A stretch of DNA of 64,000 nt from Octopus bimaculoides (taxonomy: Eukaryota). The first letter of the stretch is position 1. Each line of letters opens with the position of its first letter. Position numbers and translations under genes: made by a program. Under the pieces are notes generated by a model, which saw only the letters and a list, made by a program, of their open reading frames with translations, ran no database searches and was not told the origin of the DNA. Of the stretch, positions 7,626-63,935 are shown piece by piece. Location: the NCBI RefSeq assembly GCF_001194135.2, contig NC_068987.1:49672518-49736517 (forward strand). Reading direction: 5' to 3'.

Positions 7626-7970
7626 CCTTTAGTCGAGCAAATCGACCCCAGGACTTATTCTTTGGAAGCCTAGTACTTATTCTATCGGTCTCTTTTTGCC
7701 GAACCACTAAGTTACGGGGACGTAAACACACCAGCATCGGTTGTCAAGCGATGTTGTGGGGACAAACACAGACACACAAATATACATACATATATATATA
7801 CATATACGACAGGCTTCTTTCAGTTTCCGTCTACCAAATCCACTCACAAGGCTTTGGTCGGCCCGAGGCTATAGTAGAAGACACTTGCCCAAGGTGCCAC
7901 GCAGTGGGACTGAACCCGGAACCATGTGGCTGGTAAGCAGGCTACTTACCACACAGCCACTCCTGCACCT
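7626..7970 (-). mobile_element. tRNA/CORE-type SINE (family A)
   Basis: Near-intact copy with head GGTGCAGGAGTGGCTGTGTGGTAAG, B-box GGTTCAGTCCC and CORE-like GTGGCACCTTGGGCAAGT. Confidence 0.88.
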
Positions 7971-36640: not shown

Positions 36641-37042
36641 NNNNNNNNNNNNNNNNNNNNNNNNNNNNNNNNNNNNNNNNNNNNNNNNNNNNNNNNNNNN
36701 NNNNNNNNNNNNNNNNNNNNNNNNNNNNNNNNNNNNNNNNNNNNNNNNNNNNNNNNNNNNNNNNNNNNNNNNNNNNNNNNNNNNNNNNNNNNNNNNNNNN
36801 NNNNNNNNNNNNNNNNNNNNNNNNNNNNNNNNNNNNNNNNNNNNNNNNNNNNNNNNNNNNNNNNNNNNNNNNNNNNNNNNNNNNNNNNNNNNNNNNNNNN
36901 NNNNNNNNNNNNNNNNNNNNNNNNNNNNNNNNNNNNNNNNNNNNNNNNNNNNNNNNNNNNNNNNNNNNNNNNNNNNNNNNNNNNNNNNNNNNNNNNNNNN
37001 NNNNNNNNNNNNNNNNNNNNNNNNNNNNNNNNNNNNNNNNNN

Positions 37043-37300
37043 AGCCTGTCGTATATATGTATATATATATATATATGTATGTGTTTGTGTGTCTGTGTTT
37101 GTCCCCCTAGCATTGCTTGATAACCGATGCTGGTGTGTTTATGTCCCCGTCACTTAGCGGTTCGGCAAAAGAGACCGATAGAATAAGTACTAGGCTTAGA
37201 AAGAATAAGTCCTGGGGTCGAGTTGCTCGAATAGAGGTGGTGCTCCAGCATGGCCGCAGTCAAATGACTGAAACAAGTAAAAGAATAAAAGAATAAAAGA
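37043..37300 (+). mobile_element. SINE family A, 3' half
   Basis: Follows a gap and matches 39030-39262 closely. Confidence 0.85.
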
Positions 37301-38903: not shown

Positions 38904-39262
38904 TAAGTAGCTTGCTTACCAACCACACGGTTCTGGGTTCAGTCCCACTGCGTGGCACCTTGGGCAAGTGTCTTCTACTATAGCCTCAGGCCGACCAAAG
39001 CCTTGTGAGTGGAAACTGTAAGAAGCCCGTCGTGTATATGTATATATATATATGTATGTGTGTTTGCGTGTCTGTGTTTGCCCCCCCCCACCATTGCTTG
39101 ACAACCGATGGTGGTGTGTTTACGTCCCCGTAACTTAGCGGTTCGGCAAAAGAGACCGATAGAATAAGTACTAGGCTTCCAAAGAATAAGTCCTGGGGTC
39201 GATTTGCTCGATTAAAGGCGGTGATCCAGCATGGCCGCAGTCAAATGACTGAAACAAGTAAA
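38904..39262 (+). mobile_element. tRNA/CORE-type SINE (family A)
   Basis: TAAGTAGCTTGCTTACCAACCAC...GGTTCAGTCCCACTGCGTGGCACCTTGGGCAAGT...GACTGAAACAAGTAAA. Confidence 0.88.
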
Positions 39263-39786
39263 NNNNNNNNNNNNNNNNNNNNNNNNNNNNNNNNNNNNNN
39301 NNNNNNNNNNNNNNNNNNNNNNNNNNNNNNNNNNNNNNNNNNNNNNNNNNNNNNNNNNNNNNNNNNNNNNNNNNNNNNNNNNNNNNNNNNNNNNNNNNNN
39401 NNNNNNNNNNNNNNNNNNNNNNNNNNNNNNNNNNNNNNNNNNNNNNNNNNNNNNNNNNNNNNNNNNNNNNNNNNNNNNNNNNNNNNNNNNNNNNNNNNNN
39501 NNNNNNNNNNNNNNNNNNNNNNNNNNNNNNNNNNNNNNNNNNNNNNNNNNNNNNNNNNNNNNNNNNNNNNNNNNNNNNNNNNNNNNNNNNNNNNNNNNNN
39601 NNNNNNNNNNNNNNNNNNNNNNNNNNNNNNNNNNNNNNNNNNNNNNNNNNNNNNNNNNNNNNNNNNNNNNNNNNNNNNNNNNNNNNNNNNNNNNNNNNNN
39701 NNNNNNNNNNNNNNNNNNNNNNNNNNNNNNNNNNNNNNNNNNNNNNNNNNNNNNNNNNNNNNNNNNNNNNNNNNNNNNNNNNNNNT

Positions 39787-42480
39787 ATCAAGTTCGAAAG
39801 CTCCGGGCACTGTACAAGAGCGTGTAGAACGCTTTCATCGTCCTGCCCTCACCTTGGGCATACCGGTAACAGGTAACGCACTCCTATAGCACTACCAGGT
39901 AAGGAATTTCTGGTAGTTATCCAGGTATCCCGGCCTGAAAGTTCTTTGAAACAGGTTGGTTAGTTGCCGCTCATCGAGCCCCAGAGTATCCTAGGACGTC
40001 ATCCCTCTTGAACTCTACCAGCCCCTTTATAGAATATCGAGGTGGTATTCCCGCAGCCGGCCTTATGGATTAGCACGAGTGAGTGTATAACGTTCAGTCG
40101 TATAACGTCTTTTAATGAAGTCGAGTTTGAGTTCCTCCAAGGAGGCCAGTCGTGGAAAGAATTCCTCCGCCAGCGAATTCCACACCTGATCACCATCCAA
40201 ATAGAGCCAGAGGTGCCTTAGCCTCAGCGCATGCCTGCACATCATTAGCCACGGCATCCCTAACCCACCCTTTAGCGGTTCTTGGCAGCAAACAGAGCGC
40301 CTCACAAGCGGTTTCCTCCCCTCCACAAAAAGCGGAAGAGAAGGCGTCCTAACTTGCTTAGCCACGAATCAGAGCAAAGGACAACAGTCAGACAGTAGGT
40401 GATAACATGCAATATACACCTGCACCACCTCCGCCCTCCCTTTCAGGGATAGCACCCTTCCAGACCAGGTCCGGATTAGGGCCTCCACCCTATCTGCCAC
40501 CTCACTACGATTCTTCTCCGTCTGAGAATCCGGTCCAAATTAGATTCCAAGCAACTTAACAGGACCGTCCGTCCAGTGCCCACGACACTGGACGTTATAG
40601 TCTTGCCACTCCAGGTGACGAGCCGCAAGCCGATGGACTTGTCCTTGTTAATTTTTGCCCTTGGCACTGCCTCGTATCCTTTGATTGCATTCTCTACACA
40701 AGGTAGCTGAGCTTCATCGGACACGGTGATGGTGACGTTATCCGCCTATGCAGAAACAGATTTACCACATCCCAATTCATTGGGGATACCCCCAAACTCT
40801 CCAACCTCCGCAGCCATGGCTCAAGAGCCAGTACATACAGAAGCGGAGACAAGGGGCACCCTTAACGAACCGAGCTTTCGATCCTAAACCGACAGGTAAC
40901 CACGGAAGTCCGGGCCTAGCCCAGCCGCCTCGAGGACCGCCGCCAGGTACTGGTGGTGTACCCTATCAAAAGCTTTACTTCGGTCTAAATGGACCAATGC
41001 CTCACCTTTACCAGATAATTTACCAACCCTGTCTAAGGTCTAACATAGGATTGTCCTGGATCGACCTGCCTGGGATGGCGCATGTCTGCGCCCTCCCAAC
41101 AAGCTTCTCCGCTAAACACACCAACCTCTTCGCTAGCACCTTGGCCAAAATCTTTAACTCTACGTCAAGTAGAGTTATAGGCCTAAAATTACTAATATGN
41201 NNNNNNNNNNNNNNNNNNNNNNNNNNNNNNNNNNNNNNNNNNNNNNNNNNNNNNNNNNNNNNNNNNNNNNNNNNNNNNNNNNNNNNNNNNNNNNNNNNNN
41301 NNNNNNNNNNNNNNNNNNNNNNNNNNNNNNNNNNNNNNNNNNNNNNNNNNNNNNNNNNNNNNNNNNNNNNNNNNNNNNNNNNNNNNNNNNNNNNNNNNNN
41401 NNNNNNNNNNNNNNNNNNNNNNNNNNNNNNNNNNNNNNNNNNNNNNNNNNNNNNNNNNNNNNNNNNNNNNNNNNNNNNNNNNNNNNNNNNNNNNNNNNNN
41501 NNNNNNNNNNNNNNNNNNNNNNNNNNNNNNNNNNNNNNNNNNNNNNNNNNNNNNNNNNNNNNNNNNNNNNNNNNNNNNNNNNNNNNNNNNNNNNNNNNNN
41601 NNNNNNNCGACTCTCCCCACCGCACGAAGCTTAGCTCTGACTCTACACCCTTCGTGTTTGGCTTTGAGATGACGGAAAAAGACCGCTTTCGCCGCCATCA
41701 CTCTGAATGCAGAGCCGGATTTCATGGTCTCATCTAATTCCTTAATAAAGGTCCCTTCTAGTCTAGTCTTATCTAGACTTAACTGTTTACTAAATCTAAT
41801 AGACTCAGAACGAATGGCTCGCTTGAGGGCACACCACCACCTATTATTAATAATGGCACCGGTTAATGCCCTCTGCACTAACTCCTTAACCCTGGCACGG
41901 AAGGTTTTACAAGTCAAAATAGACTTGTTCATCTTCCAGTACCCTGCTCCCTCCCTATGACACTTATCTAGGTATACCTCACACGTCACAAACTTGTGAT
42001 CCGTGTGAGAGACACAACAAAAGCGTGGACAACTAAACTTATTCCTTTCTCTATCCCTAACGAATATTCTATCTATATAAGATCTGAGTGAACCGTCGTT
42101 ATTAGTCCACGAGCGGTTCATCCAATCTGTGTCGGTCTACTAGATTATAGCGTCCTAGTAGTCTTTCGAGACCAGGGCTTCTCCTTCTATCGGTCGAGCC
42201 AACACTATCCACCTGTGCGTTGAGAATAGTGTTAAAGTCTCCTGGTACAACTAGAGTTTTTGACGTCACTAATAAGTTCTCCAGGTCCCGGTAAAAACCA
42301 GCCTGTCTATACTCTTCTGGTGAGTAGACAGCTACCAAACTGAAGGACTGTTTACTTACGTGTGTCACATCCATAATGACCAGCCTACCTTCTGGGTCCA
42401 GAAAGACTGTACTTACCTGCACGTCCACGCAATAACAATGAACATTAGATAACAAATTAAATTCACAAACACGCAGCAGC
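39787..42480 (-). mobile_element. L1/Tx1-clade LINE ORF2 (endonuclease + reverse transcriptase), 5'-truncated and frameshifted
   Basis: DPEGRLVI, VPGDFN, SYIDRIF, GYWKMN, FRPITLLDVELKILAKVLAKRL, AKINKDKS; internal N gap. Confidence 0.9.
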
Positions 42481-48800: not shown

Positions 48801-49187
48801 TTTCATGTCATGCACGTCTCCACCTTGAAAATTGCAAGACGGTTGTAAAAGAGAATCACTGTTCTATAAGCAATGTTTCCATTCTAATGAGAAAAAATAG
48901 CATTTACTTGAAAATATGAGGACTAATGACAGGAAGGACATCCAGTCAGAAAACTTGCCTCAACTTTCATCCAACTCATGAAAGCATGTAAAAGTACACA
49001 TTAAGGCAATGCAGAGATCCTCAAATAGTTGTAACATTAAAATGTAGTAAAAGCAAAAGGCTGCTAAACCCCTCTGCAGATATAAAGAACTATAGGAAAT
49101 AGTAACAGTTTATCATTTTCCGTAACAAAAGGAATAACAAAAAAAACATGTCTATGGTCACTTTTTTTATTATTGACTTTTCAAACA

Positions 49188-49229
49188 CTATGTAGCTTCC
49201 TCCTTAAGACGATCCTTTTTGAGGGGACC
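49188..49229 (-). CDS. RPL3: RPL3 exon 8 coding part
   Basis: ttttacag|GGTCCCCTC...ACA TAG; [13 protein letters not shown]. Confidence 0.96.
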   Translation of the reverse strand, partial: GPLKKDRLKEEAT

Positions 49230-52200
49230 CTGTAAAAGAAAATGTATTTTTGTAAGTATAATTTAAGATACTGTTCAGTTTGTATAATAAACAGTAAAAT
49301 GAACATGTATCAGCCATTGGCGTCAGAGTAATGGTAAATATCACACTCTAAGCATTTAGACTGAGCTTTAATATTCGAGACTCACAGCACCAAGAAATTA
49401 CCTACAAACATCTCAGTGACTCTTGAGCTCGGAAAACTAAAATATCAGACTGCATATTTAAATAATTCAAACAAGGAACTTTACACAAACATTCTCACAT
49501 ACAGACATGTCAACTTTAACCAGATTTCAATTCATCACAAAAACAATATAACACTTACCATAAAGTTTCTCTTCTCAGCCAATGTTTGGAAGCGACCATT
49601 TCCAAATTTACTGGCAGTGTCAATAAACTTCAATGTTATCTTCTCCAGAGCCTTACGCTTGAAGTGAGTCAGGAGAGACTAAAAAAAAAGGAACAAATTT
49701 TAAAAATGTTGACAAGTTTGGTTCCCAACCAGGTATTTTGGTTTCAATCCAACTGTGACACGTTCAAGTTTAACAATGAAGGGAAAAAATACTAGCAAAA
49801 TATAGACTAAGCTACAACCTCCAGTATAAACGGTAAAGACCACATTGAAACATGACAAAGACATTCTTTCCATACACGTTCATGTTGAATCGTCCAATCG
49901 ATGCCAGCATGGAAGAGACGTTGAAACAATTACTGTTTAATGGCAAGACCTTGGCAAGTATTTAGTGCATAAGCAAACTTGTGTTTACTAAGACTGATCA
50001 TACGTAAGCAATTTCATATATCTAATAGTTTTCTATGTGATCTAATTTTGAGTAGAACATTTACAATTTTAATGGAATTCAGGATATTTACCTTACGCAT
50101 AGTAAGAATCCTTTTTCTGGGTCCCATAACACAGCCTTTTAACATCAGGAAATCTTGATTCACTTTACCATAGTGGGGGAAGCCACCGACAGGAGTGATG
50201 GATTTGTCAGTTGGATCATATTCAGTAGCAGCGTTGTTCTTTACTACTTTACCATCATGGGTGTGAATACCACGACCAACACGATAGATTTTTTTGTTGA
50301 TCTCAGTACGATGATGATAACCTTTCTGACCAGCTCTTGCTACAGAATACTGGACTCTGCTAGGATGCCAAGCACCAATACAAGCAACTTTTCGCAAACC
50401 TTTGTGAGTTTTCCTGGGCAGTTTTTTGGTATGCCAACGAGATGTAACACCTGAAAAGATAAATTGAAATTTCTCCTTGAGTATATTAGAAATTACGTAT
50501 CAAGAAAGAAGCTCCCAAAGATACAAGTAGCAACACCCCATCCCCGCAACGTAAATACTAGTTTTCCAGTAGAACCTACTCACCTTTCATACCCTTGCCA
50601 CGGGTCACACCAATTACATCAATTAATTCATCTTGCTGGAAGACATCAGCAATGGATATTGGCTTCTCCAAGTTGGCTCTAGCCCACTTCACCTTATCTT
50701 CAGTGGTGCCACCATTCAGCTGAATTTCACAAATATGTGCCTTCTTGGTACGCTTCCTGAGTTGGCGAATCTAAAATGTAGAAAATTTCTAGTTCTAAGC
50801 AAATGTGAAACATTTAACCATACCATAGTTGACTCGTTTCAAATAACTTTCCAATGTAAAATTACTTTTGTAATTAAGCTAGTTTTAAAATTAAAATGAA
50901 ATTTTTTTTTATGTAGGATTTTAGTTTAGACTTTAATATCTAGGATGAAGAATTTCAAGTACATATTAGCTTTCAGTTATCAAACTGTTAAAATTGATAT
51001 TTTGTGAACTCACCTGAGTATGGACGATAATCCTAATGGTGTTGCAATAACGGATCAGCTTTTGATAATCCTTTTCAATACTCTTCTTGCCAGCTGCATC
51101 TTGGTACTTCTTGGCGTATTTGGTATATGCCTTCCTCTTAGAGCGAGACCTTTAAAGTAGGATGGTAATAAGTAGCAAGCCTCATCACGTAAGAACAGTG
51201 AGCGGAGACTCGTTACATCAAGCAACTCAGCTCAGTCAAGCCAGCCGCAAAGTAAATGCTAAATACGTAAGGACAGTTCACACAACCTTTGTGCCAAACA
51301 ATTAAGTAACTAGCATTGACTTCAAAGACCAGATGAGAGGAACTATACCATTGCTTATCTGCAGACTTGCTATGCATTTATGCGGTATAGTCCTACAAGA
51401 GAAACAGTCAGCACAATTTAAGACATGCATGTCAGATAAAATAAGTAATCCTTTATGGGAGATTTAAAAAATGTAAAAAATTAAAGGGAAAATAACAAGG
51501 GGAGTTAAGTCAACGTACACATAACCAAAAAGTGAACAAATGTCTTTCTCTGGTGAAAACATTCAATCTATCGCATCACAAAAAATTCATGAAGCTTGCT
51601 CTTGAAAATGAAGCTACACGAAACATTGGTTGCTTTCTCCAGTGTCGGCCGAGCTAAAGATCATGGACCGTACCCCCATTGCGATTTTTTGTTTTCTTTT
51701 TCACAGGAACACAGTATACCGAGGGCGGCGATTCCGAATCTGCATTTCAAAATTTAAATCCTCCTTCCTCCCACCTAAATTTTCTTTCAAAACTTTTTGG
51801 CGAAATACGTAAAAAAAAAAATACGAAACCTGAAAAAAAGTTCTGTAAAATTTCGATTAAAAAAAAACCCAACCGTCCCCTCCGACATCTGACAAGTGAA
51901 ATTAAAGTGTTTTCTCTACTGCGTCATGCAGAACATATGGTTGAGGGTCTTTTGGAATTAAGAGAGGTATGTAAAAATTAGATTTCTTGCACACAACAAA
52001 ATGTCATTAAAAAAATTCTCTTTTGGTAATTCGTATTTAAAAAGTTGATCCTCGGTTTCGCTTGTCAGATTTCCGGTTGGGGCTAGTTTAGTAACTCGTA
52101 TTAAAATTTTGAAAACGTGTTTGTAGCATGTCAGGTTTTCTGTTTATATACTTTTTGCGTCTGCTATTTTATAATTCTATGCATGCGTGAAACATTGGTA

Positions 52201-53961
52201 GAGAAAACACTTTAATTTCACTTTTTGTCGCAGGGCGAAGGGGGGTGGGGGTGGGGTGAAAAATTGAGACTTTACAATTTTTTTTTTCAGAATCATAATC
52301 TCCCTATTTTTCTACGTATTTTGCCCCCAAATTTTTTTTTAAATGAATATTTAAGAAATGGGGGAGGGGTGGATTTAAATTTACAAATGCAGATTCGGAA
52401 TCTCCGCCAGCGACAAAAAACATTTAACTTCTCTTCAATTTTTCTTTACTTTTAAAAAATCCCATACTGAAGGATAACCTAAAATATAATGAACTTTACT
52501 TACCAGTTCTTATAGAAACGACGCCTGCACTCTTCTCCAAGATGTTCAGCAAAAATAGACTTGAAAGCACGTGGACCACGTGGAGTATCGATGTAGCCAG
52601 TAATTCCAATACAGACTACAGGTGGACATTCAATAATGGTGACACCTTCCAATACTTCTTTCTTATTCACCTCTGAAATGTCAAATTATTTTAATTGATC
52701 ACCGAAACTAGATAGTGAGTTACGAATTAGTATCGATTGCTAAAATGAGTGGGTATAATATTAAAAACTGGTTTAAACACTAAAATTTCATTTTTTTTAA
52801 ATACCACCCCTCACACAGCAAATCCAACTTTAGGGCTAATGCAGTTTTGCACCGGATTCCTCCGCTTTTGATGTCAGAGATAACGGAATAAGCAAACAAA
52901 AGTTTTGATTTTATTTACTTTAAAGAGATCATAACGAATTTACGAACATATGCAAATCGAAATTAAATACAAAAAACAATGAAATAATTTAATGTAAATT
53001 TTTGAAATAATTCTATGTAAAAAATAAGGAAAAAGAAAATTCAAAGCATCAAATGATGAGTATAATAAAATACACCATTTTATGAGATTTTTTGCATATT
53101 CGTAATTTCCGACATCTAAAACAGGGATCCGAAAAATATTTTCNNNNNNNNNNNNNNNNNNNNNNNNNNNNNNNNNNNNNNNNNNNNNNNNNNNNNNNNN
53201 NNNNNNNNNNNNNNNNNNNNNCAAGGACAGGTGCGAAACTGCATGGTAGGGTAGGGGGTTAATTTTTTTTTTCCTTGCATATTCGTAATCGACATCTAAA
53301 AGTTAATTTTGTTTTCGAAAAATTGCGTTTTTCAAGAAGTGCGAAACTGCACCTCCCCCCGTTCAGTTTTTTTGTCTGTATTTCATTTCTAACGTAAGGA
53401 CAATCGTTTATATTTTCAACTAAATTTTTTTTAATTGTCAAAAGGGGAAAAAAAAAAAAAAATTTACATGCTGCGCGAAAAGAATTTAAATAAGAAATTA
53501 TGAACACTTAATGAACTTAAGTAAAAAAAAGTGAAGTTTTTACTGTAAAACCATCCGACAGCACGTGGCAGAATGTCCGCCATCTTCACGTACGGCATCA
53601 TACCAAGATAACATTAATTAAAATGCGACTAATTACTAAAAATATAACTTACTTGAGCCAGGTCTGTCAACTTCGCGAACGATATGAGTCATCCCAGCCT
53701 TATAACCCATAAAAGCGGTTAAGTGAACGGGCTTTTTGGGATCATCTTTTGGAAATGCCTTGATTTTCCCCTTATGACGTTGACTTCTTTTTTTGGGCAG
53801 AAAGCCCTTGGAGCCATGCCGTGGGGCAGAAAATTTACGATGAGACTGAAATGATTAAAAAAATATGCTCAACATAAAAACTGAAGGGTTTTAAGTAGTA
53901 TTAATAAATCTGACGACATAATTTTTATAGTGAAGCAACCAGAGACTAGACTACGTACCAT
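49188..53961 (-). CDS. RPL3: 60S ribosomal protein L3 (uL3), complete 8-exon gene, 402 aa
   Basis: Exons 53961-53959, 53845-53653, 52672-52504, 51149-51014, 50770-50584, 50450-50092, 49678-49559 and 49229-49188 total 1209 nt. All introns are GT-AG with consistent phases. Translation reads [13 protein letters not shown]...[17 protein letters not shown]...[30 protein letters not shown]...[19 protein letters not shown] lies at 49171-49166. Confidence 0.98.
49559..49678 (-). CDS. RPL3: RPL3 exon 7 (120 nt)
   Basis: ttttag|TCTCTCCTG...TTTATG|gtaagt; [40 protein letters not shown]. Confidence 0.97.
50092..50450 (-). CDS. RPL3: RPL3 exon 6 (359 nt)
   Basis: ttttcag|GTGTTACATCT...ATGCGTAAG|gtaaat. 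Overlaps ORF 50014-50397 ([13 protein letters not shown]...GGFPHYG...RILTMRK). Confidence 0.98.
50584..50770 (-). CDS. RPL3: RPL3 exon 5 (187 nt)
   Basis: ttttag|ATTCGCCAA...ATGAAAG|gtgagt; [21 protein letters not shown]...[12 protein letters not shown]. Confidence 0.97.
51014..51149 (-). CDS. RPL3: RPL3 exon 4 (136 nt)
   Basis: aag|GTCTCGCTCT...ACTCAG|gtgagt; [27 protein letters not shown]...IIVHTQ. Confidence 0.97.
51720..52415. mobile_element. Inverted-repeat element inside RPL3 intron 3
   Basis: GCGATTCCGAATCTGCATTTCAAAATTTAAATCC (~51727) versus GGATTTAAATTTACAAATGCAGATTCGGAATCTCC (~52371-52405). Confidence 0.6.
52504..52672 (-). CDS. RPL3: RPL3 exon 3 (169 nt)
   Basis: cag|AGGTGAATAAG...AAGAACTG|gtaagt; [17 protein letters not shown]...RRRFYKNW. 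Confidence 0.97.
53653..53845 (-). CDS. RPL3: RPL3 exon 2 (193 nt)
   Basis: tttcag|TCTCATCGTAAA...GGCTCAA|gtaagt; [21 protein letters not shown]...DRPGS. Confidence 0.97.
53959..53961 (-). CDS. RPL3: RPL3 exon 1 coding part (ATG only)
   Basis: CTTTTCTCTGCAGATCGCTTGCTGTG-ATG|gtacgt. An ATG-only first exon is the same arrangement as vertebrate RPL3. Confidence 0.93.
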
Positions 53962-53979
53962 CACAGCAAGCGATCTGCA

Positions 53980-54040
53980 GAGAAAAGAATATGGAAGACT
54001 GGGTGGTGATTTATATAGTAGAAGGTAGCGCGCGCGCGAA
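53980..54040 (-). promoter_or_regulatory. RPL3 core promoter: TCT/5'TOP initiator with TATA box at -30
   Basis: The minus strand reads TTC(+1, 53987)TTTTCTCT, matching the TCT consensus YC+1TYTYY. TATATAAA lies at 54017-54010, exactly 30 nt upstream. A (GC)n run lies at 54028-54038. Confidence 0.8.
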
Positions 54041-54409
54041 GTTCACAACCCTACGAGAGTTTGATTTATGATTAAAATTTTAAATAATTTCTATTAACTG
54101 AAAATGTACACAATAGTATTTATAATAAAAATTATTCAAGAATATGTTAAAACTAAAAAATATGTGATTCTAAACTATAAAAATTATTTGTGAACAAGAA
54201 TTAAGAGTCAAATTGAAAGACACTTTTTCGTATCAAATAAGTTTGTTTTTATTTTTAATTAATTCGTTAAATACAGTGAAAATGTAACTAAAAATTAACA
54301 TGTAAAATTATAGTGCTTCTTAGTTTTAAATTACATAAATGCTCAAAATCTTGATAATGTTATTAGTTCGCTTTATTGTTTCACAACCTTGTCGTTCAGG
54401 GTTGGCAAA

Positions 54410-54506
54410 ATGGTGGCAGACGACAACATTGACCGTGATCTTCCTTATAATAAATTTGTTTTCAGCATTTTTAAGATCATAGATAAACCAGTGACTGCTT
54501 TTAGAG
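54410..54506 (+). CDS. NDUFB10: NDUFB10 exon 1 coding part
   Basis: MVADDNIDRDLPYNKFVFSIFKIIDKPVTAFR, ending G|gtaagc. Confidence 0.9.
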
Positions 54507-57500
54507 GTAAGCTTTGTCACTTTATAACTAAATCTGTTTTATATTAACTGTCAAGCATTAACTTTATTTAAATACCTTTGCTTTGATTTTGCCCTTGAAG
54601 TTGAAAGAGTTAGGTATTTTTTTTTTAATCCGTGTTTTTAAAACTAGATTTATTTTGTTATGAGAAAAAGACTATTATTAAATAACTACATTTATTCTCT
54701 TTTCATTTTGCAATACTATTTTCCAACAAGGCATTTTTTTAATGCATGTCATTAATGTTAAGATTAAAGATAATAAAGTAAACGGTGGAATTATAAGGAC
54801 AAACTTATTTTCTTAGTAATTTTGGTCTTACAGTCAGTATTTTTTTGATTCAGTTACACCTCTGCACGACCTATCTTAAATTTGTAAGGCGACTCTAGTT
54901 TAATTTTCTTTTGAGGTTTATTAACCTTATAATTCAAATTTTGGCAGTTTTGGAATATATCTGTCAATATCACCTTTAGTTTCTGTGATAAACCTGATTG
55001 AATAACATGGCCCTATCTCGTTCATTTTCAAATTCATCTTCAAAATAGTAGGGAGTAGTAATCTCAATGGATTTTATTATTATTATCAGACAAATGATAA
55101 CACTGTTTTAGCCTCCAAACCAAGGTGAGGAGAACCTAAAAGTTTATTTTTATTTAACAATATTCCAAGTCAATTACAAGTTAAAACTGGAAATCCGACA
55201 TCTTTAGATACTGCTGTCTGTCAGCATCAGTCTGTTGCCATGGTACTCTAGTTGAAGATTGCAGTTCCCCTATTTCATTCATCTTAAAAGAAATTCTAAT
55301 AGAAAATCAAGTACTTTGATAACTTCTTCAAAATATAGACTCTTATATTTTTTTCTAACTAAAATGGATAAATATTTCTTTTGTGTAGTATTGTAAGTGC
55401 ATCTGCCTAGCAAAAGAAAGTAACAGGGATGTATTCCAGTGTACATTTTGAAATATTATTTGAATACCTAAAAATTTGTTGACCAAAATTTTACTATTAC
55501 TTGAGGTATGGTTTCTGAGAATGTGTTAGTTGTGTAGCAGCAACTGAGTGGTGATTATTTTTCTCTTTGCAACCATACATTATTGTAAAATTGTATGGTT
55601 TTTAAATTGTTTCCATTGTCTGTGATTAGCAGTTTAGCGTGTGGTAAACCTGATTGTGATGCCATAGTCTGTATCCATTCACCTGCGTTGTGCTGTTCTG
55701 TGGCCTAACTCTTACTAGTTCTGTGCAGCTCAGTGCTGTAAGAAGCAGGTGTAGTATGTAATTAAAGGTGTTTTGTTTGCCTGCAGTGCTACATTCATGT
55801 TCTTCATTATGCTTGTATAGACAACAGTAAGCAACCTGAAATCATTGTGATCACATGGAAATAAATCTCAACTTCTGTATAAAACTTTAAGATGGAAGAA
55901 GATATTTTAGTACCAGTTGCAAGTTATTAATGCTTATCAACTTGAAACCATACTGCTTCTTGGTCAGTAGAAGAAAAGATCTATAATTCTTCAGACTTTA
56001 ACCACCCTTATCATGATATCACAAAGCACACACACCTATATATATAGAAAGTCATACTAGATCAGTCATCTCTCTTTTAAATATACTCAAACTTCACCAT
56101 TCTGTGCTGCCATCCAACACTTTCTTTTCTGAAAGACCTCTATTTCCAACCTTCACCTACTCTTGCATTTATCTCATCATCCAACTCTGCTGTTACCAAT
56201 CATTCCATTCTCCATGACTTCACTCAAATAGCCTCTTTTTTCCCCATCATACTCTTGCTCTTTTCACCCACTCACCCTTACCTTTACCACTTCAGCCATT
56301 ACCACTTACTTTCCTACCAACAATACCCCTAAATATATCTGCCTTCTCATCATACTCTTGACCCATTCACCTTCCCACCTATTCTCATCCCTCAGATGTC
56401 ATGGTTTTCTCTCCTCCTCTTCAAATATCCATTTCTGGCATCATTCTTCCCTTTACTGTTCACACTATAAGGTGGTTGGGTAAATCAGCAGAGAAAGTAT
56501 ATGGTTATGAGGTCCCTCTAGTCCTGTCTCACAGATGACTGTTCAGCCTCTCAAGTGTTGGTGCCATAAGAAAATGCACCCAGTATACTATGTAAAGTGG
56601 TTGACATTTGGAAAAACATCTAGCCATACTAGCCATAAATACCAAGCCAGATGACATGTATGTACACCAAGACACCTTGACTTCGAAAGCAGTCGCTCCT
56701 AGTGGGAAGTAACTTGAACTGCAATGACCCAACCAACCTGTGCTAGCATAGAAAATGGACATAAAAAAATAATGATGATATTGTATTACTTAAATGAACA
56801 CAATAGTAATGGATTAGTTAAAAATTGTTGGGAGTGTATGACCATCAATAAATGTTCTGAATATCTCCTTGCTGAACATATTTCCATCTGTATCTCTCTT
56901 AATACCATCACCATTCATGCCACCACTATGGGAGAACTTTTATGCAGTCACTGGACTTGCTTGAAACAGAAGCTGTCCCTCACATTCCACTCTATCATTT
57001 TTAAAACAAACAAATGACACACACAGTTTACTTGGATATAAAAGCAGGATGGTTCATTGGTGGAAGATCTGTGATGATATTTTTTTTTACTCAATGAGGG
57101 CATGTGATTAGAATGTCACAGGAAAGAATAGCGAGAGGGATTCTTCAAACTGAAAGAACTAAGGGTATACCAAGAACAAAATGGTTGGATGACATCTATA
57201 GTCCTAGTTGGTCACACTTGGGAATCCAGCCTGAAATTCTAATGACAGTTGTTTCTGATAAGACCCTATGGAGGAGTTGCCTGAGGACTCTGCCCCCGAT
57301 GACCCTCCTAGAAATAATGAGCAGACCTGCAAGTAAGCAATATGAACAACAACATGGATTTTATCATACTCATCATTTGATACTTTGAATTTTCTTTTTT
57401 CTTATTTTTTTTTTTATTTAGAAAAAATTGTTGAGCCGCTTCAAAGTAGGAATAAACACTATTTTTATCACCGTCAATTCAGAAGAGTGCCAACCATCGA

Positions 57501-57858
57501 CCAGTGTGAATTTGATGACGTAGCATGTGTGTTTGAAGCTGACCAACAGTTCAAACGAGACTGGTAGGTTAAAATTTTTTTTTCTGTTGCTTAACATCTT
57601 TTAAAGCTGTCTGGGTTTTGTATGTTATTTAGAAGGTTCTGAGTTATGTAGAGAGAGAAAATGATAGCATCTTTTGTCCTACCTTACATGTCATTTCATT
57701 TNNNNNNNNNNNNNNNNNNNNNNNNNNNNNNNNNNNNNNNNNNNNNNNNNNNNNNNNNNNNNNNNNNNNNNNNNNNNNNNNNNNNNNNNNNNNNNNNNNN
57801 NNNNNNNNNNNNNNNNNNNNNNNNNNNNNNNNNNNNNNNNNNNNNNNNNNNNNNNNNN

Positions 57859-57920
<62 letters not shown>

Positions 57921-60900
57921 TGTTATCTAGGCCCTTGTTAAGCCTTGATTCAGGAAACCCGTGATCAAAGGCTTTTTTTAGCTGTGACCACTCCATGTCT
58001 CTCTTTTTCTTTTTTTTTTCCTTTTTTCAGACACAGTGTATCTAAGATCACAATATCCAATGTACCATTTTTAAGGTAGTAGAGTTTGAATTTAAAAGAG
58101 AATAGGCTGCTATTCGTAACAGATCATTTAGACACATAGAGATTCTGAAGTATGTATATTTACTCTATAGCAAGTTAAGGTTATTCCTAACTTTAACACC
58201 TAACATAAAACCACCTCCCTCTCTTCTACAATCCTACTCAGTCAAGCTGGATCTTGTGAGTTACATGGTAACTTCAATAGTGCTGGTTCCACAAACTAAA
58301 ACACCCAATACTCTCTGTTAAGTGGATGACATTTGTAAAGGCATTCAGCTCTAGAAACCATTCCAAAGCAGATGTTGGAACACAATGCATTCCTCTGAAT
58401 TAGTAGAGCCTGTCAAACTCTCCAGCTCATTCCAGCATAGAAGATAGACATTAGAAGATGGTGATGATGATGATTTCTTGTATAGTTGAGACAAGGGAAG
58501 GAAATGCTAATCAAAATATACTGCAGATTAGAGGTTTCTATTTTTTTTTTATAGAAATACTGATCATTTACTTGTTCTAAGATCATTTCCCAGTATCAGG
58601 GTCTTGTCCATTCTTACAATGGCTTCTTCTTGGTCAGCTTCTTCAATTACTCTAGAGCAGTGTTTCCATTGACATTCCAATACTTTTTGCTCTTCGTTCG
58701 TAATGTCTGTTTTATATATAGTGTGCTGGAATGTTGAAATTTGTTGATCTTTTCAGACACATTATGTATTCCCCAAGTGTTTATTTCTGTTCATTATTTT
58801 TATTTAACAATATTCCAAGTCAATTACAGGTTAAAACTGGAAATCCGACAACATCTTTAGATACTGCTGTCAGTCAGCATCAATCTGTTGCCATGGTACT
58901 CTAGTTGAAGATTGCAGTTCCCCTATTTCATTCATCTTAAAAGAAATTCTAATTGAAAATCAAGTACTTTGATAACTTCTTCAAAATATAGACTCTTGTA
59001 TTTTTTCTAACTAAAATGGATAAATATTTCTTTTGTGTAGTATTGTAAGTGCATCTGCCTAGCAGAAGAAAGTAACAGGGATGTGTTCCAGTTTACCATT
59101 TTGAAATATTACTTGAAGACCTAAGTGATGGATTTGCATAATTATTCTTTTGGAAGAACTGCTAACATTTTCCACAAATTCCTAGTATCTTTCATAAGAT
59201 TTGTTGTATCAGTTTATTCCAAAAGTTTTATTTCATTTTTCATGAGGTTTTTGTAGTGATAAATTTATTATTTTGGGGGTTAGTTGGTTCAGAATTTCCT
59301 TGAATCTTTGTCAATAATGTTTTCCTTTTTGTTTGTAACTTCTCCTCCCTAAAACAAGGGTTTTTATTTTGTCGGTGATTTGTACCCTATTTTTTTTTTT
59401 TTTTTTTGGAAGGGGAGTTTCCAATTGTCAATATATCTAATATTATTGTTATATCATCTTCCATTGTATGTTGACTTGTTTTTAATACTTATACTGTTTT
59501 CTTTGGTTTGACCATCTTATTGTGGTCTGTTCTTCCATTGTTATTGTTTGGAAGTATGTAAAATAATTGAACAAGACAAAACCAAAAAGTTCCAAAATGG
59601 AAAGAAATTGAAGGTTAATGCAAATATGAACTACAAAACAAAAAATATCATTTACTGCATACATGCCTACAAGGTAGGGAGAATTATATTGGTCAAACGG
59701 GAACAAAATTAGTAAACTGGGTGAGGGTACATGAACAACAAATAAGATTCATCTGCAAGAAATGTTCCATAAATAGAAAATTCAAAATCTTCTCTATTTA
59801 CCAATTAAAGGAAGAAAAAAGTTATAACAAGCTTTCACAATATGAAATCTTTCTAAAAGATTTGTATTATTCTTTTCTCTTTCTAAGATTTTTTAAATAT
59901 AATTAATAATTTTATATTTTAAGAAAATCCTTTAAATATTGTGACCATATCAAGAATCCTTTCTAAAAACTTATATATAGTTCTACAAGGTTTATCTTCA
60001 GAGACAATACTTCAATACTCTTGAAAATTTAAAGATGATCAACTCTGTATATACTTTAATTTTTTTGTTTTTATTAAAAAAAATTTTTAACTTTTAGGAG
60101 CGTTGATTCAAATATCTTGAAGATTCTTCGTAAACGAAAGATGGAATGCATTATGTATGAAGGTGCTAATGCTCCACAAAAATGCAAAAAGGTTACTGAT
60201 GATTATGAAAATGCTACTACTAACTATTTCATAAAATGTAAGTTTAAATTTCTATTACCAAATTATTTCTGTCCAATAGGTATTTATTTCATTTTACTTA
60301 TTGATACAGAAATTGCTTTTTAGTTTGTTTTTGAGCTGAAAATAATTAATTGGCTGACTATTAGTAGCAGAAGTTCTACTTAAAAATAATATATCATCAT
60401 CATAATTGTTTTAACATCTACTTTTTCATGCTTGCAAGGGTCAAATGAGAGTATGTTGTGATAGTTTTCTATGGCTAGAAGCCAACCCTGTCACCAACCC
60501 ACACATTTTCCAAATGGGGTAATGTTCTTCCAGCTTGGACATGCTTTTGTACAAGCAAATGATACTGTTAGTGAAGCCATCATTTATAAGCCAGCAAGCT
60601 AAAGATGTGTAGACACAAGGAACTATGAAATAACTCATATACATATGCTCACACACATACATATATGATGTGTCTGTATGTGTGTGTATACACACATATG
60701 ATGCGCGTCTTTCAATTCCATTTGGCCAAACTCACTCATATGACTTAGGTTGGCCTTGGGCTATTGTCAAAGACACTTGCCCAAGATACCATACAGTGGG
60801 ACCAAATCCAAAACAACATGATTTCTTAATGCCACAGCCATCCTACATCATAATATAGAGCTTGAAATAGTGTTAGCATAATTTCTAATGTTTAATGGCA

Positions 60901-62567
60901 GTGAAAATATTTCAAATGACTGCTTACATAGTGGCCACAAAAGTATTTCTTTTTGGTTTGAAAGATATATTATATGAAGCATTTATTGATATGTGTAGTG
61001 ATTGATAATGAACTGAATGTGTTGTGTGTGTCATTGGTTACCCCCCCAAAAAACTCTGCCCACTTTCTACTGTTGTCGCCTACTCTTTCTTAACTTCTTT
61101 ACTTATCATCCCTCATCACCCACTAACTAATTCTCCATCTTCAACCATCTCTCACCCTCTTGTACATTTTTGCAGCCTCTATCCACCCACTTTATATATT
61201 GAGGGTGCTCTCATATACCTCATCACTACTATATTTATTTATTTCCTGCTCTACCCTAACCAAAACCCTCTCTTCTATAATGTGAGTAGCTGTGTAGCTC
61301 TTCTACAGCAAGAAACCTGTTTTGTTATAGCTCCTCTTAGACTTCAATCCCTCATCCCATAGCATAAAGCTGCCTCCTTCTGTACTATGATCCCACCCAG
61401 TCAGTGAGATCTTAGTCTTGCAGGCTGTATGACAACCTCATTTATGCTGGTGACATGAAAAAAGCAGCCTTGTATAAAAATTATAATCTCAAAATTGTTG
61501 CTACATGAAATGGTTTGGTACTGTCTCTACATTATTGTACATCAATGTTAAAATTATTTGTTGAAAGTAGTACTGACATAGCAGTGGGGTTGAGAATTTC
61601 ACTTTGCAACAATGTGGTTACAAGTCCACTGTGAAGCATTTGGGTCAGTGACTTTGACTATAGCCCAGGTCAACCACTTTTGAGTGGATTTGATTAGATA
61701 GAAAATGAAAGAAGCCTGTTATGTGTGTTTGTGCTAGTACACTTGCATGCGTCTGTATGTGTTTACATTTGTGCTTCTTTGAATATCACTGAGCTACAAG
61801 CAGTGAATATAATTATTATTTCCCCTATCAAGAAATTGTCTACTGGTTTTGTTTCTTTGAAGACTTTTATAGAATGAGATACCTTATGTGAAAAACGAGT
61901 AAAGGTTAGTGACAGGAAGGGCACCAGGCTGTAAAACAGTACCTCAATAATATATTCAACTAGAAAACAGACATAAAAACAAATAAATATAGTGAATCTA
62001 TGATCAATAGTCTGGCAAATATGGAGAAGGTCTAATGAAATGTAGACATGCCTGGAGTTGTGCCCATAGTTACCAAGATTAGTTTATCCAATTTTAGTCA
62101 TTGAACTATTGATTTCTTCTTATTGCATAATTATTATTAATTAATTACATATTATTTTTTCATATTCATATTATGTCTGAAGATCCTAACCAGAATGAAT
62201 TTAACCCTTTTGTTACAGTTAATTTTGAAAATAATGAAGTATTTAGTAAAATAAATTTGTCGTTATTAAACTGGTGTTTGGAACATAAATTAACATGGAA
62301 TTTTGATAGAAGGTTTTAATTTAGATCACTTCAAAACAGCAATTTTTTATCATACAACCAGAGTGGTTCTGAGCAAGTTAGTATTAAAAAGGTTTAAATT
62401 ATTTGTTGTTGAATTTTGAGTTAATATATAATCACATATGTTGTACTCCAACAGATGGTGAACTTGGAGCTGCAGCTTCTGTTGTTGATGCCTACATGAA
62501 ACAGAAACATCGCATAATCTGGGAAAGAAGACAAGAAATACAAGGCACCGGTAAACGATTACGCTGA
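54410..62567 (+). CDS. NDUFB10: NADH dehydrogenase (ubiquinone) 1 beta subcomplex subunit 10 (PDSW), complete 4-exon gene, 163 aa
   Basis: Exons 54410-54506, 57422-57563, 60098-60237 and 62455-62567 total 492 nt, with GT-AG introns in phases 1/2/1. Translation includes IIDKPVTAFRE...KHYFYHRQFRRVPTIDQC...CVFEADQQFKRDWSVDSNIL...EC...KC...KYGELGAAASVVDAYMKQKHR, matching the family motifs. AATAAA lies at 62639-62644. Confidence 0.95.
55145..55470 (+). repeat. ~325-bp direct repeat, copy 1 (NDUFB10 intron 1)
   Basis: Near-identical to 58795-59123. Confidence 0.9.
57100..57330 (+). mobile_element. RTE-clade LINE C-terminal fragment in NDUFB10 intron 1
   Basis: RMSQERIARGIL...RTKGIPRTKWLDDI...DKTLWR. 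Confidence 0.7.
57422..57563 (+). CDS. NDUFB10: NDUFB10 exon 2 (142 nt)
   Basis: Long poly-T acceptor; EKIVEPLQSRNKHYFYHRQFRRVPTIDQCEFDDVACVFEADQQFKRDW; donor TG|gtaggt. Confidence 0.96.
57859..57918. repeat. (GT)n microsatellite adjoining a gap
   Basis: Directly visible. Confidence 0.97.
58795..59123 (+). repeat. ~325-bp direct repeat, copy 2 (NDUFB10 intron 2)
   Basis: Near-identical to 55145-55470. Confidence 0.9.
60098..60237 (+). CDS. NDUFB10: NDUFB10 exon 3 (140 nt)
   Basis: ttttag|GAGCGTTGAT...ATAAAAT|gtaagt; SVDSNILKILRKRKMECIMYEGANAPQKCKKVTDDYENATTNYFIK. Confidence 0.95.
62455..62567 (+). CDS. NDUFB10: NDUFB10 exon 4 coding part
   Basis: ccaacag|ATGGTGAACTT...CGC TGA; YGELGAAASVVDAYMKQKHRIIWERRQEIQGTGKRLR*. 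Confidence 0.95.
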
Positions 62568-62864
62568 AAACTTGCAGGAAATGTCTGTAATTCTTAGGCT
62601 TCTTTTATTTTTTCCAAATTTAAAAGTATTAGAAAACAAATAAAATATAAGAACTATTTTATGCTCTTTGTTTTATTTCATTTTTAGAGTGTTTTTAATA
62701 AAGTTATTTAAAATAGATTCTTGTTGTTGTTATTGAACTGCTTCAAATCTAGGTATAACTAAATACTGAAAGCTAACTTACATATTCATTAATCAAATAA
62801 TTAAATTTTCTGGTCCTGTATTTCAATTTAAATGATTGCTTATCATCGTCAATGTACATCCACA

Positions 62865-63935
62865 GAAAGATGGCATACTTAGATGGATTTGGCTATTTAA
62901 CATTCTCTTCCCCTGGGAGCTCCTCTATGCTGATGACCTTGCACTAATTGCGGAGTCACTATCAGAACTAGAGGAGAAGTTTCAGGTGTGGAAGCAAGGA
63001 CTAGAATCGAAGGGCCTTAGAGTCAACCTAGCTAAAACCAAAATCCTAATAAGTAGGAAGGTAGATAAAACACAAACCCCTTCAGGTAGATGGCCCTGCT
63101 CAGTATGTAGAAAATGAGTAGGTAGTAACTCTATAAGATGTACCCGGTGCAAGCTATGGACACATAAGAGGTGCAGCAATATCAAAGGCAGGTTAACTAG
63201 GCAGTTATTTTTTGTATGTGGCAGATGTTCAGGTGCAATAAACACTGTTAACNNNNNNNNNNNNNNNNNNNNNNNNNNNNNNNNNNNNNNNNNNNNNNNN
63301 NNNNNNNNNNNNNNNNNNNNNNNNNNNNNNNNNNNNNNNNNNNNNNNNNNNNNNNNNNNNNNNNNNNNNNNNNNNNNNNNNNNNNNNNNNNNNNNNNNNN
63401 NNNNNNNNNNNNNNNNNNNNNNNNNNNNNNNNNNNNNNNNNNNNNNNNNNNNNNNNNNNNNNNNNNNNNNNNNNNNNNNNNNNNNNNNNNNNNNNNNNNN
63501 NNNNNNNNNNNNNNNNNNNNNNNNNNNNNNNNNNNNNNNNNNNNNNNNNNNNNNNNNNNNNNNNNNGCTCTTGTGCGGGTGGCACATAAAATACACCATT
63601 TTGAGTGTGGCCGTTGCCAGTACCGCCTGACTGGCCTTCGTAGGATTTTCGAGCGAGGTCGTTGCCAGTGCCCCTGGACTGGCTCTTGTGCGGGTGGCAC
63701 ATAAAAAACACCATTTTGAGCGTGGCCGTTGCCAGTACTGCCTGAAAGGCCTTCGTGCGGGTGACACGTAAAAGCACCCACTACACTCTGTGAGTGGTTG
63801 GTGTTAGGAATGGCATCCAGCTGTAGAAACTCTGCCAAATTAGATTGGAGCCTGGTGTTGCCATCCGGTTTCACCAGTCCTCAGTCAAATCGTCCAACCC
63901 ATGCTAGCATGGAAAGCGGACTTTAAACGATGATG
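62865..63935 (+). mobile_element. RTE-type LINE 3' portion with Cys-rich domain, tandem 3' repeats and SINE-shared tail
   Basis: PWELLYADDLALIAE...GLRVNLAKTK; WPCSVC..NSIRCTRCKLWTHKRC. The tail CCATGCTAGCATGGAAAGCGGAC...ATGATGAT is also found inverted at ~4840-4890. Confidence 0.88.

What the first reader, a model, noticed from the sequence alone, without database searches (positions are those of the whole stretch)
49188..62567. RPL3 and NDUFB10 head-to-head: a probable bilaterian-age microsyntenic pair sharing a bidirectional promoter
Seen in sequence: RPL3 (minus strand, start site ~53987) and NDUFB10 (plus strand, ATG 54410) diverge about 420 bp apart, in a genome otherwise inflated with repeats. 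Established: on human 16p13.3 the paralogue RPL3L is divergently adjacent to NDUFB10, with RPS2 next. Inference: the pairing predates the protostome-deuterostome split, and the RPL3L locus, not human RPL3, keeps the ancestral neighbour. Its survival through coleoid genome rearrangement would imply a cis-regulatory constraint linking a cytosolic ribosome subunit to a complex I subunit.
Basis: partly seen in the sequence, partly recalled or inferred. Interest (0 to 1): 0.72.

Follow-up and report, generated by a model that had tools for sequence, protein, structure and literature searches.

The report
Ancient RPL3–NDUFB10 head-to-head gene pair
In this octopus sequence a ribosomal protein gene (RPL3) and a mitochondrial complex I gene (NDUFB10) sit back to back about 450 bases apart, and the same arrangement turns up in snails, worms, lamp shells, a damselfly, acorn worms, amphioxus, fish, birds and apes, so it is an inherited neighbourhood more than half a billion years old and one more example of a known kind of conserved gene pair.

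Summary
The window is from an Octopus-like octopod and holds an intact 8-exon RPL3 on the minus strand and an intact 4-exon NDUFB10 on the plus strand. They diverge from a 447-bp ATG-to-ATG spacer. Both assembly gaps are intronic, and their flanks are collinear with O. vulgaris.

The evolutionary inference is strongly supported. I found RPL3(-)/NDUFB10(+) head-to-head in three more octopod assemblies and in Haliotis, Owenia, Lingula, Ischnura, Ptychodera, Branchiostoma, a teleost-like contig, a hoatzin-like bird contig and chimpanzee. In the three vertebrates the partner is RPL3L-type. Spacers are 235-713 bp in invertebrates and about 1.5-5 kb in vertebrates.

- The pair is lost in Anopheles.
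- No RPL3 was found within 10 kb upstream in a spider or a stingray.
- One insect contig keeps the pair in tandem orientation.
- RPS2 is a neighbour only in vertebrates.
- Non-bilaterians could not be tested.

"Shared bidirectional promoter" fits the spacing but is untested. A selected ribosome–complex I link is not supported.

This is a new, apparently undescribed member of a known class: conserved ancient microsyntenic pairs in 5'-5' orientation. As a by-product I found a 13-nt element (AGCCTCGTTTTCG) at the same place in the RPL3 core promoter in four phyla.

The parts
49188..53987 (-). RPL3 (uL3) gene, predicted TSS to stop codon. The 8 coding exons are 53962-53960, 53845-53653, 52672-52504, 51149-51014, 50770-50584, 50450-50092, 49678-49559 and 49229-49188.
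   Evidence: tblastn and splice-site reading. The 402-aa product matches Pfam PF00297 at 574 bits over the full profile.
49166..49171 (-). RPL3 polyadenylation signal AATAAA, 17 nt after the stop codon
   Evidence: Sequence read.
53979..53987 (-). Pyrimidine tract CTTTTCTCT (TOP/TCT-like), the predicted RPL3 transcription start, 25 nt upstream of the ATG
   Evidence: An equivalent tract lies upstream of an ATG-only first exon in every other species examined.
54010..54017 (-). TATATAAA box about 30 nt upstream of the predicted RPL3 start, invariant in four octopod sequences
53963..54409 (.). 447-bp spacer between the two start codons. It is 27% G+C with CpG o/e 1.4 and has no assembly gap. Blocks conserved as far as Argonauta are ACGAGAGTTTGATTTAT (54053-54069), TTTTCGTATCAAA (54225-54237) and TAACTAAAA (54285-54293).
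54410..62567 (+). NDUFB10 (PDSW) gene, ATG to stop. The 4 coding exons are 54410-54506, 57422-57563, 60098-60237 and 62455-62567.
   Evidence: The 163-aa product matches Pfam PF10249 at 184 bits. It is 93% identical to O. vulgaris NDUFB10. A profile of its relatives matches complex I subunit NDUFB10 in solved structures.
62639..62702 (+). Two AATAAA signals (62639-62644 and 62697-62702) downstream of the NDUFB10 stop
53144..53221 (.). Assembly gap inside RPL3 intron 2
   Evidence: The flanks are collinear with O. vulgaris L011.
57702..57858 (.). Assembly gap inside NDUFB10 intron 2
   Evidence: The flanks are collinear with O. vulgaris L011.
49304..49434 (-). H/ACA snoRNA-like element in RPL3 intron 7
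   Evidence: Full-length sub-threshold Rfam match to ceN100 (37.7 bits, E 4e-4). It is conserved in O. vulgaris and Argonauta where the rest of the intron is not.
51160..51400 (-). Conserved structured element(s) in RPL3 intron 3, with no Rfam match

Best explanation
Two intact housekeeping genes, cytosolic ribosomal protein uL3 (RPL3) and complex I accessory subunit NDUFB10, are transcribed away from each other across a 447-bp spacer.

Shown: this arrangement is inherited from at least the last common ancestor of protostomes and deuterostomes.

Inferred: the pair has been kept because the two compact promoters lie back to back in a few hundred bases. Almost any rearrangement breakpoint between the genes would damage one or both promoters, or a shared nucleosome-free region. 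This is the 'coregulation / bidirectional-promoter' class of conserved ancient microsyntenic pairs.

Within the spacer RPL3 has its own core promoter, a TATA box at -30 plus a pyrimidine start. NDUFB10 presumably starts within about 100 bp of its ATG. The two cores would then lie about 300-400 bp apart and could share only upstream elements.

After the vertebrate duplication of RPL3, the single NDUFB10 stayed beside the copy that became muscle-specific RPL3L. RPS2 joined on the other side of NDUFB10, and the spacer grew to 1.5-5 kb.
For: Gene models and family membership.

Head-to-head adjacency, with real exons checked by tblastn:
- Argonauta L001
- O. vulgaris and O. sinensis L011/L012
- Haliotis L002
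- Owenia L003
- Lingula L006
- Ischnura L005
- Ptychodera L004
- Branchiostoma L010
- chimpanzee L007/L008
- a hoatzin-like bird contig L053 and a teleost-like contig L083
The tblastn checks are.

ATG-to-ATG spacers, after locating the ATG-only first exon, are 235-713 bp in all invertebrates.

The gene on the far side of NDUFB10 differs in every phylum: GPCR, DBB-domain protein, ankyrin/ion-channel protein, tektin, rhomboid, kelch or RPS2. In Ischnura no gene was called in the 10 kb downstream. Only the pair itself is conserved.

The spacer is the only non-exonic, non-snoRNA-like stretch of the locus that still gives a blastn match between the window and Argonauta.

A 13-nt element sits at a fixed position in the RPL3 core promoter in four phyla, which shows ancient constraint on this promoter region.

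The general class, with its 5'-5' bias and short spacers, is described in PMC3514665.
Against: - No expression, TSS or chromatin data exist here, so sharing of elements is inferred from distance only.
- No canonical motif is shared across phyla in the spacer apart from the RPL3-proximal 13-mer.
- Between the window and O. vulgaris the spacer is no more conserved than the introns, 94.9% against 94-96%. These species are too close to be informative.
- Adjacency persists in vertebrates although the spacer is 1.5-5 kb and RPL3L is tissue-restricted.
- One insect contig (L081) keeps the pair in tandem, so head-to-head promoters are not strictly required.
- Anopheles has a different upstream neighbour. 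A spider, a stingray and a second insect contig have no RPL3 in 8.5-10 kb upstream.
Confidence: 0.75

Rival explanations
1. Selected functional coupling. The shared promoter exists to co-regulate cytosolic ribosome output with complex I biogenesis. That coupling, not just promoter architecture, is what selection preserves.
For: - Both genes are growth-related housekeeping genes, and the head-to-head orientation is kept across about 10 lineages.
- Conserved 5'-5' pairs are on average more co-expressed (PMC3514665).
- In mouse heart the RPL3/RPL3L balance alters ribosome-mitochondria contacts and ATP levels (PMC10287911).
Against: - Only one of about 80 ribosomal protein genes and one of about 45 complex I genes are involved (counts from established knowledge).
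- Vertebrate RPL3L is expressed only in striated muscle while NDUFB10 is a general complex I subunit (PMC10287911, PMC10313321).
- The pair is lost in Anopheles, RPL3 is absent within 10 kb upstream in a spider, and the pair is re-oriented in one insect contig.
- No shared transcription-factor motif was found across phyla.
Confidence: 0.15
2. Passive survival. There is no constraint beyond a very small target. A spacer of a few hundred bases is simply hit rarely by breakpoints, so the pair persists by inertia.
For: - Spacers are 235-713 bp in invertebrates.
- Losses and a re-orientation do occur.
- The spacer is not more conserved than the introns among close octopods.
Against: - Retention in about 10 lineages spanning all three bilaterian superphyla while every outer neighbour has changed.
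- Persistence across vertebrates with 1.5-5 kb spacers (PMC2121648).
- The spacer still aligns between Octopus and Argonauta when the neighbouring intron sequence does not.
Confidence: 0.1
3. Artefact or coincidence. The adjacency in the window would be a scaffold misjoin, or independent chance adjacencies in different lineages.
For: The window is a gappy draft with 14 runs of N.
Against: - There is no gap in the spacer.
- The whole 14-kb locus is collinear with two chromosome-level Octopus assemblies and with Argonauta.
- The same orientation recurs in many independent assemblies from different phyla.
Confidence: 0.01

Closest known systems
Conserved ancient microsyntenic pairs (CAMPs) of the coregulation type (Irimia et al. 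2012, PMC3514665), for example HSPE1-HSPD1
   Same: Two unrelated genes adjacent in many distant animal lineages. The 5'-5' orientation is conserved, the spacer is under 1 kb in most lineages, and both genes are housekeeping genes.
   Different: I found no paper that names this pair. It may sit in supplementary lists that are not held here. Co-expression and a shared promoter are shown for HSPE1-HSPD1 and are untested here. Depth beyond Bilateria is unknown for this pair.
Human/vertebrate RPL3L-NDUFB10-RPS2 locus at 16p13.3
   Same: Same two gene families in the same divergent orientation. Confirmed here in chimpanzee and in a bird contig, each with RPS2 tail-to-tail after NDUFB10. The vertebrate block NOXO1-TBL3-RPS2-RPL3L is published (PMC2121648), and the human locus is named in bioRxiv 10.64898/2026.06.23.733628.
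   Different: The octopus has the single canonical RPL3, not a muscle paralogue. The spacer is 0.45 kb rather than 1.5-5 kb and is AT-rich rather than a CpG island. There is no RPS2 within 10 kb in octopods or any other invertebrate examined.
Mammalian-type bidirectional promoters (divergent TSSs under 1 kb apart; Adachi and Lieber 2002, as cited in PMC3514665)
   Same: Divergent genes whose starts lie at most 422-447 bp apart.
   Different: The spacer has 27% G+C and a TATA box on the RPL3 side, unlike the typical CpG-island, TATA-less mammalian case. Bidirectional activity of a single fragment has not been shown.

Membership tests
Ribosomal protein uL3 (RPL3) | Full-length match to the Ribosomal_L3 family above the curated threshold | tested here: met
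   PF00297, 574.5 bits (cut-off 22), profile positions 1-369 of 369.
Ribosomal protein uL3 (RPL3) | Intact reading frame with canonical splice sites and a stop codon | tested here: met
   8 coding exons, all introns GT/AG, 402 aa.
Ribosomal protein uL3 (RPL3) | Transcript starts in a 5' terminal oligopyrimidine tract | not testable with these tools
   The tract CTTTTCTCT lies 25 nt upstream of the ATG with a TATA box at -30. No transcript data are available.
NDUFB10 / PDSW subunit of complex I | Match to the NDUFB10 family above the curated threshold | tested here: met
   PF10249, 183.9 bits (cut-off 22.2), profile positions 1-126 of 126. A profile of orthologues matches NDUFB10 chains of solved complex I structures at E 1e-60 to 1e-67.
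NDUFB10 / PDSW subunit of complex I | Four conserved cysteines of the twin-cysteine fold | tested here: met
   There are four invariant Cys columns in a 14-species alignment. The window protein has Cys at the matching places (..DQCEFDDVACVFEA.. and ..MECIMYEGANAPQKCKK..).
Conserved ancient microsyntenic pair (5'-5' coregulation class) | Unrelated genes adjacent in several distantly related animal lineages | tested here: met
   Mollusca (5 assemblies including the window), Annelida, Brachiopoda, Insecta, Hemichordata, Cephalochordata and Vertebrata (3).
Conserved ancient microsyntenic pair (5'-5' coregulation class) | Orientation conserved | tested here: met
   Head-to-head in all loci that hold both genes, except the tandem insect contig L081.
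Conserved ancient microsyntenic pair (5'-5' coregulation class) | Correlated expression of the two genes | not testable with these tools
   No expression data are available.
Bidirectional promoter | Divergent transcription starts less than 1 kb apart | tested here: met
   The ATG-to-ATG distance of 447 bp is an upper bound. It is 235-713 bp in the other invertebrates.
Bidirectional promoter | One regulatory fragment drives both genes through shared elements | not testable with these tools
   Only sequence is available. Conserved blocks exist among octopods. No cross-phylum shared motif was found apart from the RPL3-proximal 13-mer.

The most novel reading that the evidence does not exclude
The spacer would be a true shared regulatory module dating from the bilaterian ancestor. 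That module would include an ancient RPL3 core-promoter element: AGCCTCGTTTTCG, exact in an annelid and in amphioxus, and replaced by a TATA box in octopods. In vertebrates the regulatory landscape of the OXPHOS gene NDUFB10 would then be what gave its neighbour RPL3L its heart- and muscle-restricted expression. Genome position would thus tie a specialised ribosome to mitochondria-rich tissue.
Probability: 0.12. Interest if true: 0.7.

Novelty: new member of a known kind. Interest (0 to 1): 0.45.

Why it matters
The pair gives a clean, easily checked example of a two-gene neighbourhood that has outlived more than 550 million years of genome scrambling, including the coleoid reorganisation.

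It places the muscle-specific ribosomal paralogue RPL3L at the ancestral RPL3 locus. This is useful for interpreting the RPL3L-NDUFB10-RPS2 haplotype block linked to atrial fibrillation and the reported RPL3/RPL3L effects on mitochondria.

It offers a compact 235-713 bp promoter region, comparable across phyla, for testing whether such pairs are kept by shared regulation or only by lack of room for breakpoints.

It does not by itself show a functional link between ribosomes and complex I.

Tried and rejected
- **Non-bilaterians.** I tried to obtain cnidarian, sponge or placozoan NDUFB10 proteins through a profile search of 1.84 billion representatives, three cluster-name look-ups and a third homologue search seeded with the most divergent clade. 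Every named hit was bilaterian. The divergent clade (P0303/P0316) is unnamed marine metatranscriptome material. The question stays open.
- **Prior reports.** Eight literature searches, plus supplement look-ups for Irimia 2012 (no supplement text is held), Davila Lopez 2010 and Schmidbaur 2022, found no mention of the pair. Schmidbaur's blocks need at least 3 genes, so a two-gene pair would not be listed.
- **Known promoter motifs.** I scanned the spacers of eight species for DRE/ZBED1, NRF1, ETS/GABP, YY1, SP1, CRE, E-box, ZNF143, ERR and M4. Nothing was shared.
- **Excess spacer conservation.** Window against O. vulgaris is uninformative: 94.9% in the spacer against 94-96% in the introns.
- **RPS2 to the right of the window.** It is absent within 10 kb downstream in O. 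vulgaris, O. sinensis and Argonauta, where a GPCR follows NDUFB10, and in all other invertebrate loci.
- **Long ORFs elsewhere in the window.** None has a Pfam match above the curated threshold, and several run across stretches of N.
- **Sub-threshold miRNA hits at 60636-60700.** I dismissed these as a simple (AC/AT) repeat.
Full report
**1. What is in the window**

The region 49188-62567 runs exactly from the stop codon of RPL3 (minus strand) to the stop codon of NDUFB10 (plus strand).

I located the exons by tblastn with remembered human RPL3 and NDUFB10 sequences, then read the splice sites.

RPL3 (minus strand):
- It has eight coding exons. The first holds only the ATG (53962-53960). All introns are GT/AG and the product is 402 aa.
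- It matches Pfam Ribosomal_L3 over the whole profile at 574 bits.
- A pyrimidine tract CTTTTCTCT begins at 53987, 25 nt upstream of the ATG. A TATATAAA box lies 30 nt further upstream, at 54017-54010.

NDUFB10 (plus strand):
- It has four coding exons and a 163-aa product.
- It matches Pfam NDUFB10 at 184 bits.
- It has Cys at the places of the four invariant cysteines of the family alignment.
- A profile of its orthologues matches NDUFB10 chains of solved complex I structures at E 1e-60 to 1e-67.

The protein is 93% identical to O. vulgaris NDUFB10 and 85% to Argonauta hians NDUFB10. The window therefore comes from an octopod close to Octopus.

**2. Gaps and assembly**

The window has 14 runs of N. 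The two flagged runs lie in RPL3 intron 2 and NDUFB10 intron 2. Neither touches an exon or the 447-bp spacer.

The whole locus, including both gap flanks, is collinear with the gap-free O. vulgaris locus. The spacer aligns end to end with O. vulgaris and O. sinensis at 94.9%. A misjoin is excluded.

**3. Is the neighbourhood old?**

I looked up the genomic context of NDUFB10 orthologues and checked each locus by tblastn for real RPL3 exons. The spacer is the ATG-to-ATG distance, or an upper bound where the ATG-only exon of RPL3 was not located.

| Lineage | Locus | Arrangement | Spacer |
|---|---|---|---|
| O. vulgaris, O. sinensis | L011, L012 | head-to-head | 436 bp |
| Argonauta hians | L001 | head-to-head | 443 bp |
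| Haliotis asinina (gastropod) | L002 | head-to-head | 281 bp |
| Owenia fusiformis (annelid) | L003 | head-to-head | ~269 bp |
| Lingula anatina (brachiopod) | L006 | head-to-head | ~427 bp |
| Ischnura elegans (damselfly) | L005 | head-to-head | 235 bp |
| Ptychodera flava (hemichordate) | L004 | head-to-head | ~328 bp |
| Branchiostoma floridae (amphioxus) | L010 | head-to-head | 713 bp |
| Chimpanzee | L007, L008 | head-to-head | ~5 kb |
| Bird host contig in a metagenome | L053 | head-to-head, then RPS2 | ≤1.5 kb |
| Teleost-like contig | L083 | head-to-head | ≤1.7 kb |
| Insect contig, closest to Hymenoptera | L081 | tandem, RPL3 then NDUFB10 | ~1.1 kb |
| Anopheles stephensi | L014 | not adjacent; eIF4E-BP lies upstream | n/a |
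| Parasteatoda (spider) | L013 | no RPL3 within 10 kb upstream | n/a |
| Hemitrygon (stingray) | L009 | no RPL3 within 10 kb upstream | n/a |
| Second insect contig | L076 | no RPL3 within 8.5 kb upstream | n/a |

- The L053 NDUFB10 exons are 100% identical to hoatzin NDUFB10 in three of four exons.
- The spider, stingray and L076 rows are inconclusive, not losses.
- The gene on the far side of NDUFB10 differs in every phylum, so only the pair is conserved.
- With the pair in Lophotrochozoa, Ecdysozoa and Deuterostomia, independent origin is not credible. The pair dates to at least the protostome-deuterostome ancestor.
- I could not obtain any cnidarian, sponge or placozoan orthologue, so greater age is untested.

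**4. Vertebrates**

- The chimpanzee partner is RPL3L. Its exons are 95% identical to my remembered human RPL3L against 84% for RPL3, and the gene model is 407-412 aa.
- The bird and fish partners are only 68-75% identical to human RPL3. The octopus RPL3 exons are 56-88% identical to human RPL3. I infer that the bird and fish copies are the fast-evolving RPL3L type.
- RPS2 follows NDUFB10 tail-to-tail in chimpanzee and bird. It appears in no invertebrate locus.
- Published vertebrate synteny (NOXO1-TBL3-RPS2-RPL3L, including pufferfish; PMC2121648) and the phrase "RPL3L-NDUFB10-RPS2 locus" (bioRxiv 10.64898/2026.06.23.733628) agree with this.
- RPL3L is described as vertebrate-specific and expressed only in heart and skeletal muscle (PMC10287911, PMC10313321).
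- NDUFB10 is single-copy.

**5. Mechanism**

Every species has the same RPL3 5' architecture: a pyrimidine tract, a short leader, an ATG-only first exon and then an intron. All invertebrate spacers are under 1 kb, which is the operational signature of a bidirectional promoter (PMC3514665).

In the octopus the spacer is AT-rich (27% G+C). RPL3 has its own TATA and start at one end. The NDUFB10 start is unknown. The spacer is the only non-exonic, non-snoRNA-like part of the locus that still gives a blastn match between the window and Argonauta. Several blocks are invariant across the four octopod sequences.

Scans for standard promoter motifs found nothing shared across phyla.

My preferred reading is that the pair persists because two compact promoters lie back to back, so breakpoints between them are deleterious. 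Some upstream elements may also be shared. A selected functional coupling of ribosome and complex I is not needed. It is weakened by the muscle-restricted vertebrate partner, the loss in Anopheles and the tandem insect case. Pure small-target inertia remains a live rival.

**6. By-product: a deeply conserved promoter element**

A k-mer comparison of the spacers found the 13-mer AGCCTCGTTTTCG.

- It lies on the RPL3 sense strand, 28-39 nt upstream of the RPL3 ATG and just 5' of the pyrimidine tract.
- It is exact in Owenia and amphioxus and has one mismatch in Ptychodera and in Lingula.
Two-mismatch hits occur at the chance rate.
- It is absent from molluscs, Ischnura and vertebrate RPL3L. Octopods instead have the TATA box at a similar position, just upstream of the start, and a weaker ACTCTCGT(TTT) about 95 nt upstream of the ATG.
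- Its distance to RPL3 is fixed, while its distance to NDUFB10 varies from 230 to 676 nt. It therefore belongs to the RPL3 core promoter.
- I could not test whether it is specific to RPL3 or general to ribosomal protein genes.

**7. Novelty and score**

Conserved 5'-5' pairs are a known class of roughly 600 pairs (PMC3514665). Coleoids retain about as many ancient blocks as a scallop (PMC9023564). I found no paper that names this pair, though it may sit in supplementary lists that are not held here.

I rate it a new member of a known kind, of moderate interest. The evolutionary claim is solid, the regulatory claim is untested, and the 13-mer is a small unexpected lead.

Noticed in passing
L003:9766-9778, L010:9320-9332, L004:9704-9716, L006:9597-9609 (minus strand): The 13-mer AGCCTCGTTTTCG lies 28-39 nt upstream of the RPL3 ATG. 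It is exact in Owenia and amphioxus and has one mismatch in Ptychodera and Lingula. These are the only matches with at most one mismatch in 740 kb of held sequence. It is absent in molluscs, Ischnura and vertebrate RPL3L.
   Followed up: partly
window 49304-49434 (-): A ~130-nt H/ACA snoRNA-like element in RPL3 intron 7. It gives a full-length but sub-threshold Rfam match to C. elegans ceN100 (37.7 bits, E 4e-4), has an ACA 3 nt from the end, and is conserved in O. vulgaris and Argonauta.
   Followed up: partly
window 51160-51400 (-): Two conserved blocks in RPL3 intron 3 are nearly invariant across the window, O. vulgaris and Argonauta and fold into long hairpins. There is no Rfam match. This is possibly an unclassified snoRNA.
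   Followed up: partly
L005:8977-9176, L010:8269-8365 and 7032-7127, L006:8421-8490: RPL3 introns host different snoRNAs in other animals, all above the Rfam gathering score: SNORA73 in Ischnura, two SNORD14 copies in amphioxus and SNORD31 in Lingula. RPL3 is a recurrent snoRNA host gene.
   Followed up: no
L081:1637-8144: An insect contig from a metagenome (NDUFB10 closest to Hymenoptera) has RPL3 and NDUFB10 adjacent on the same strand, 1.1 kb apart. Adjacency is kept after a change of orientation.
   Followed up: partly
window 62910-63240: An interspersed repeat just downstream of NDUFB10 recurs in inverted orientation inside the NDUFB10 gene of O. vulgaris (L011:17602-17932) and Argonauta (L001:14790-15113).
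   Followed up: no
window 57422-57563: In NDUFB10 exon 2, five of the seven nucleotide differences from O. vulgaris change the amino acid, although the flanking introns are 94-96% identical. The protein evolves fast in this lineage.
   Followed up: no
window 1-49000: There are 14 assembly gaps in the whole window. Several long ORFs (for example 7123-7737, 36619-37113, 39171-39889, 41020-41634, 62982-63874) run across stretches of N and are spurious. None of the ten long ORFs tested reached a Pfam threshold.
   Followed up: partly
proteins P0303, P0316, P0334, P0392-P0408: A divergent NDUFB10 clade of about 250 aa (WYHENLRRHPG in place of YYHRQFRRVP) is known only from marine metatranscriptomes and metagenomes. 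No source names an organism, so its taxon is unknown.
   Followed up: partly
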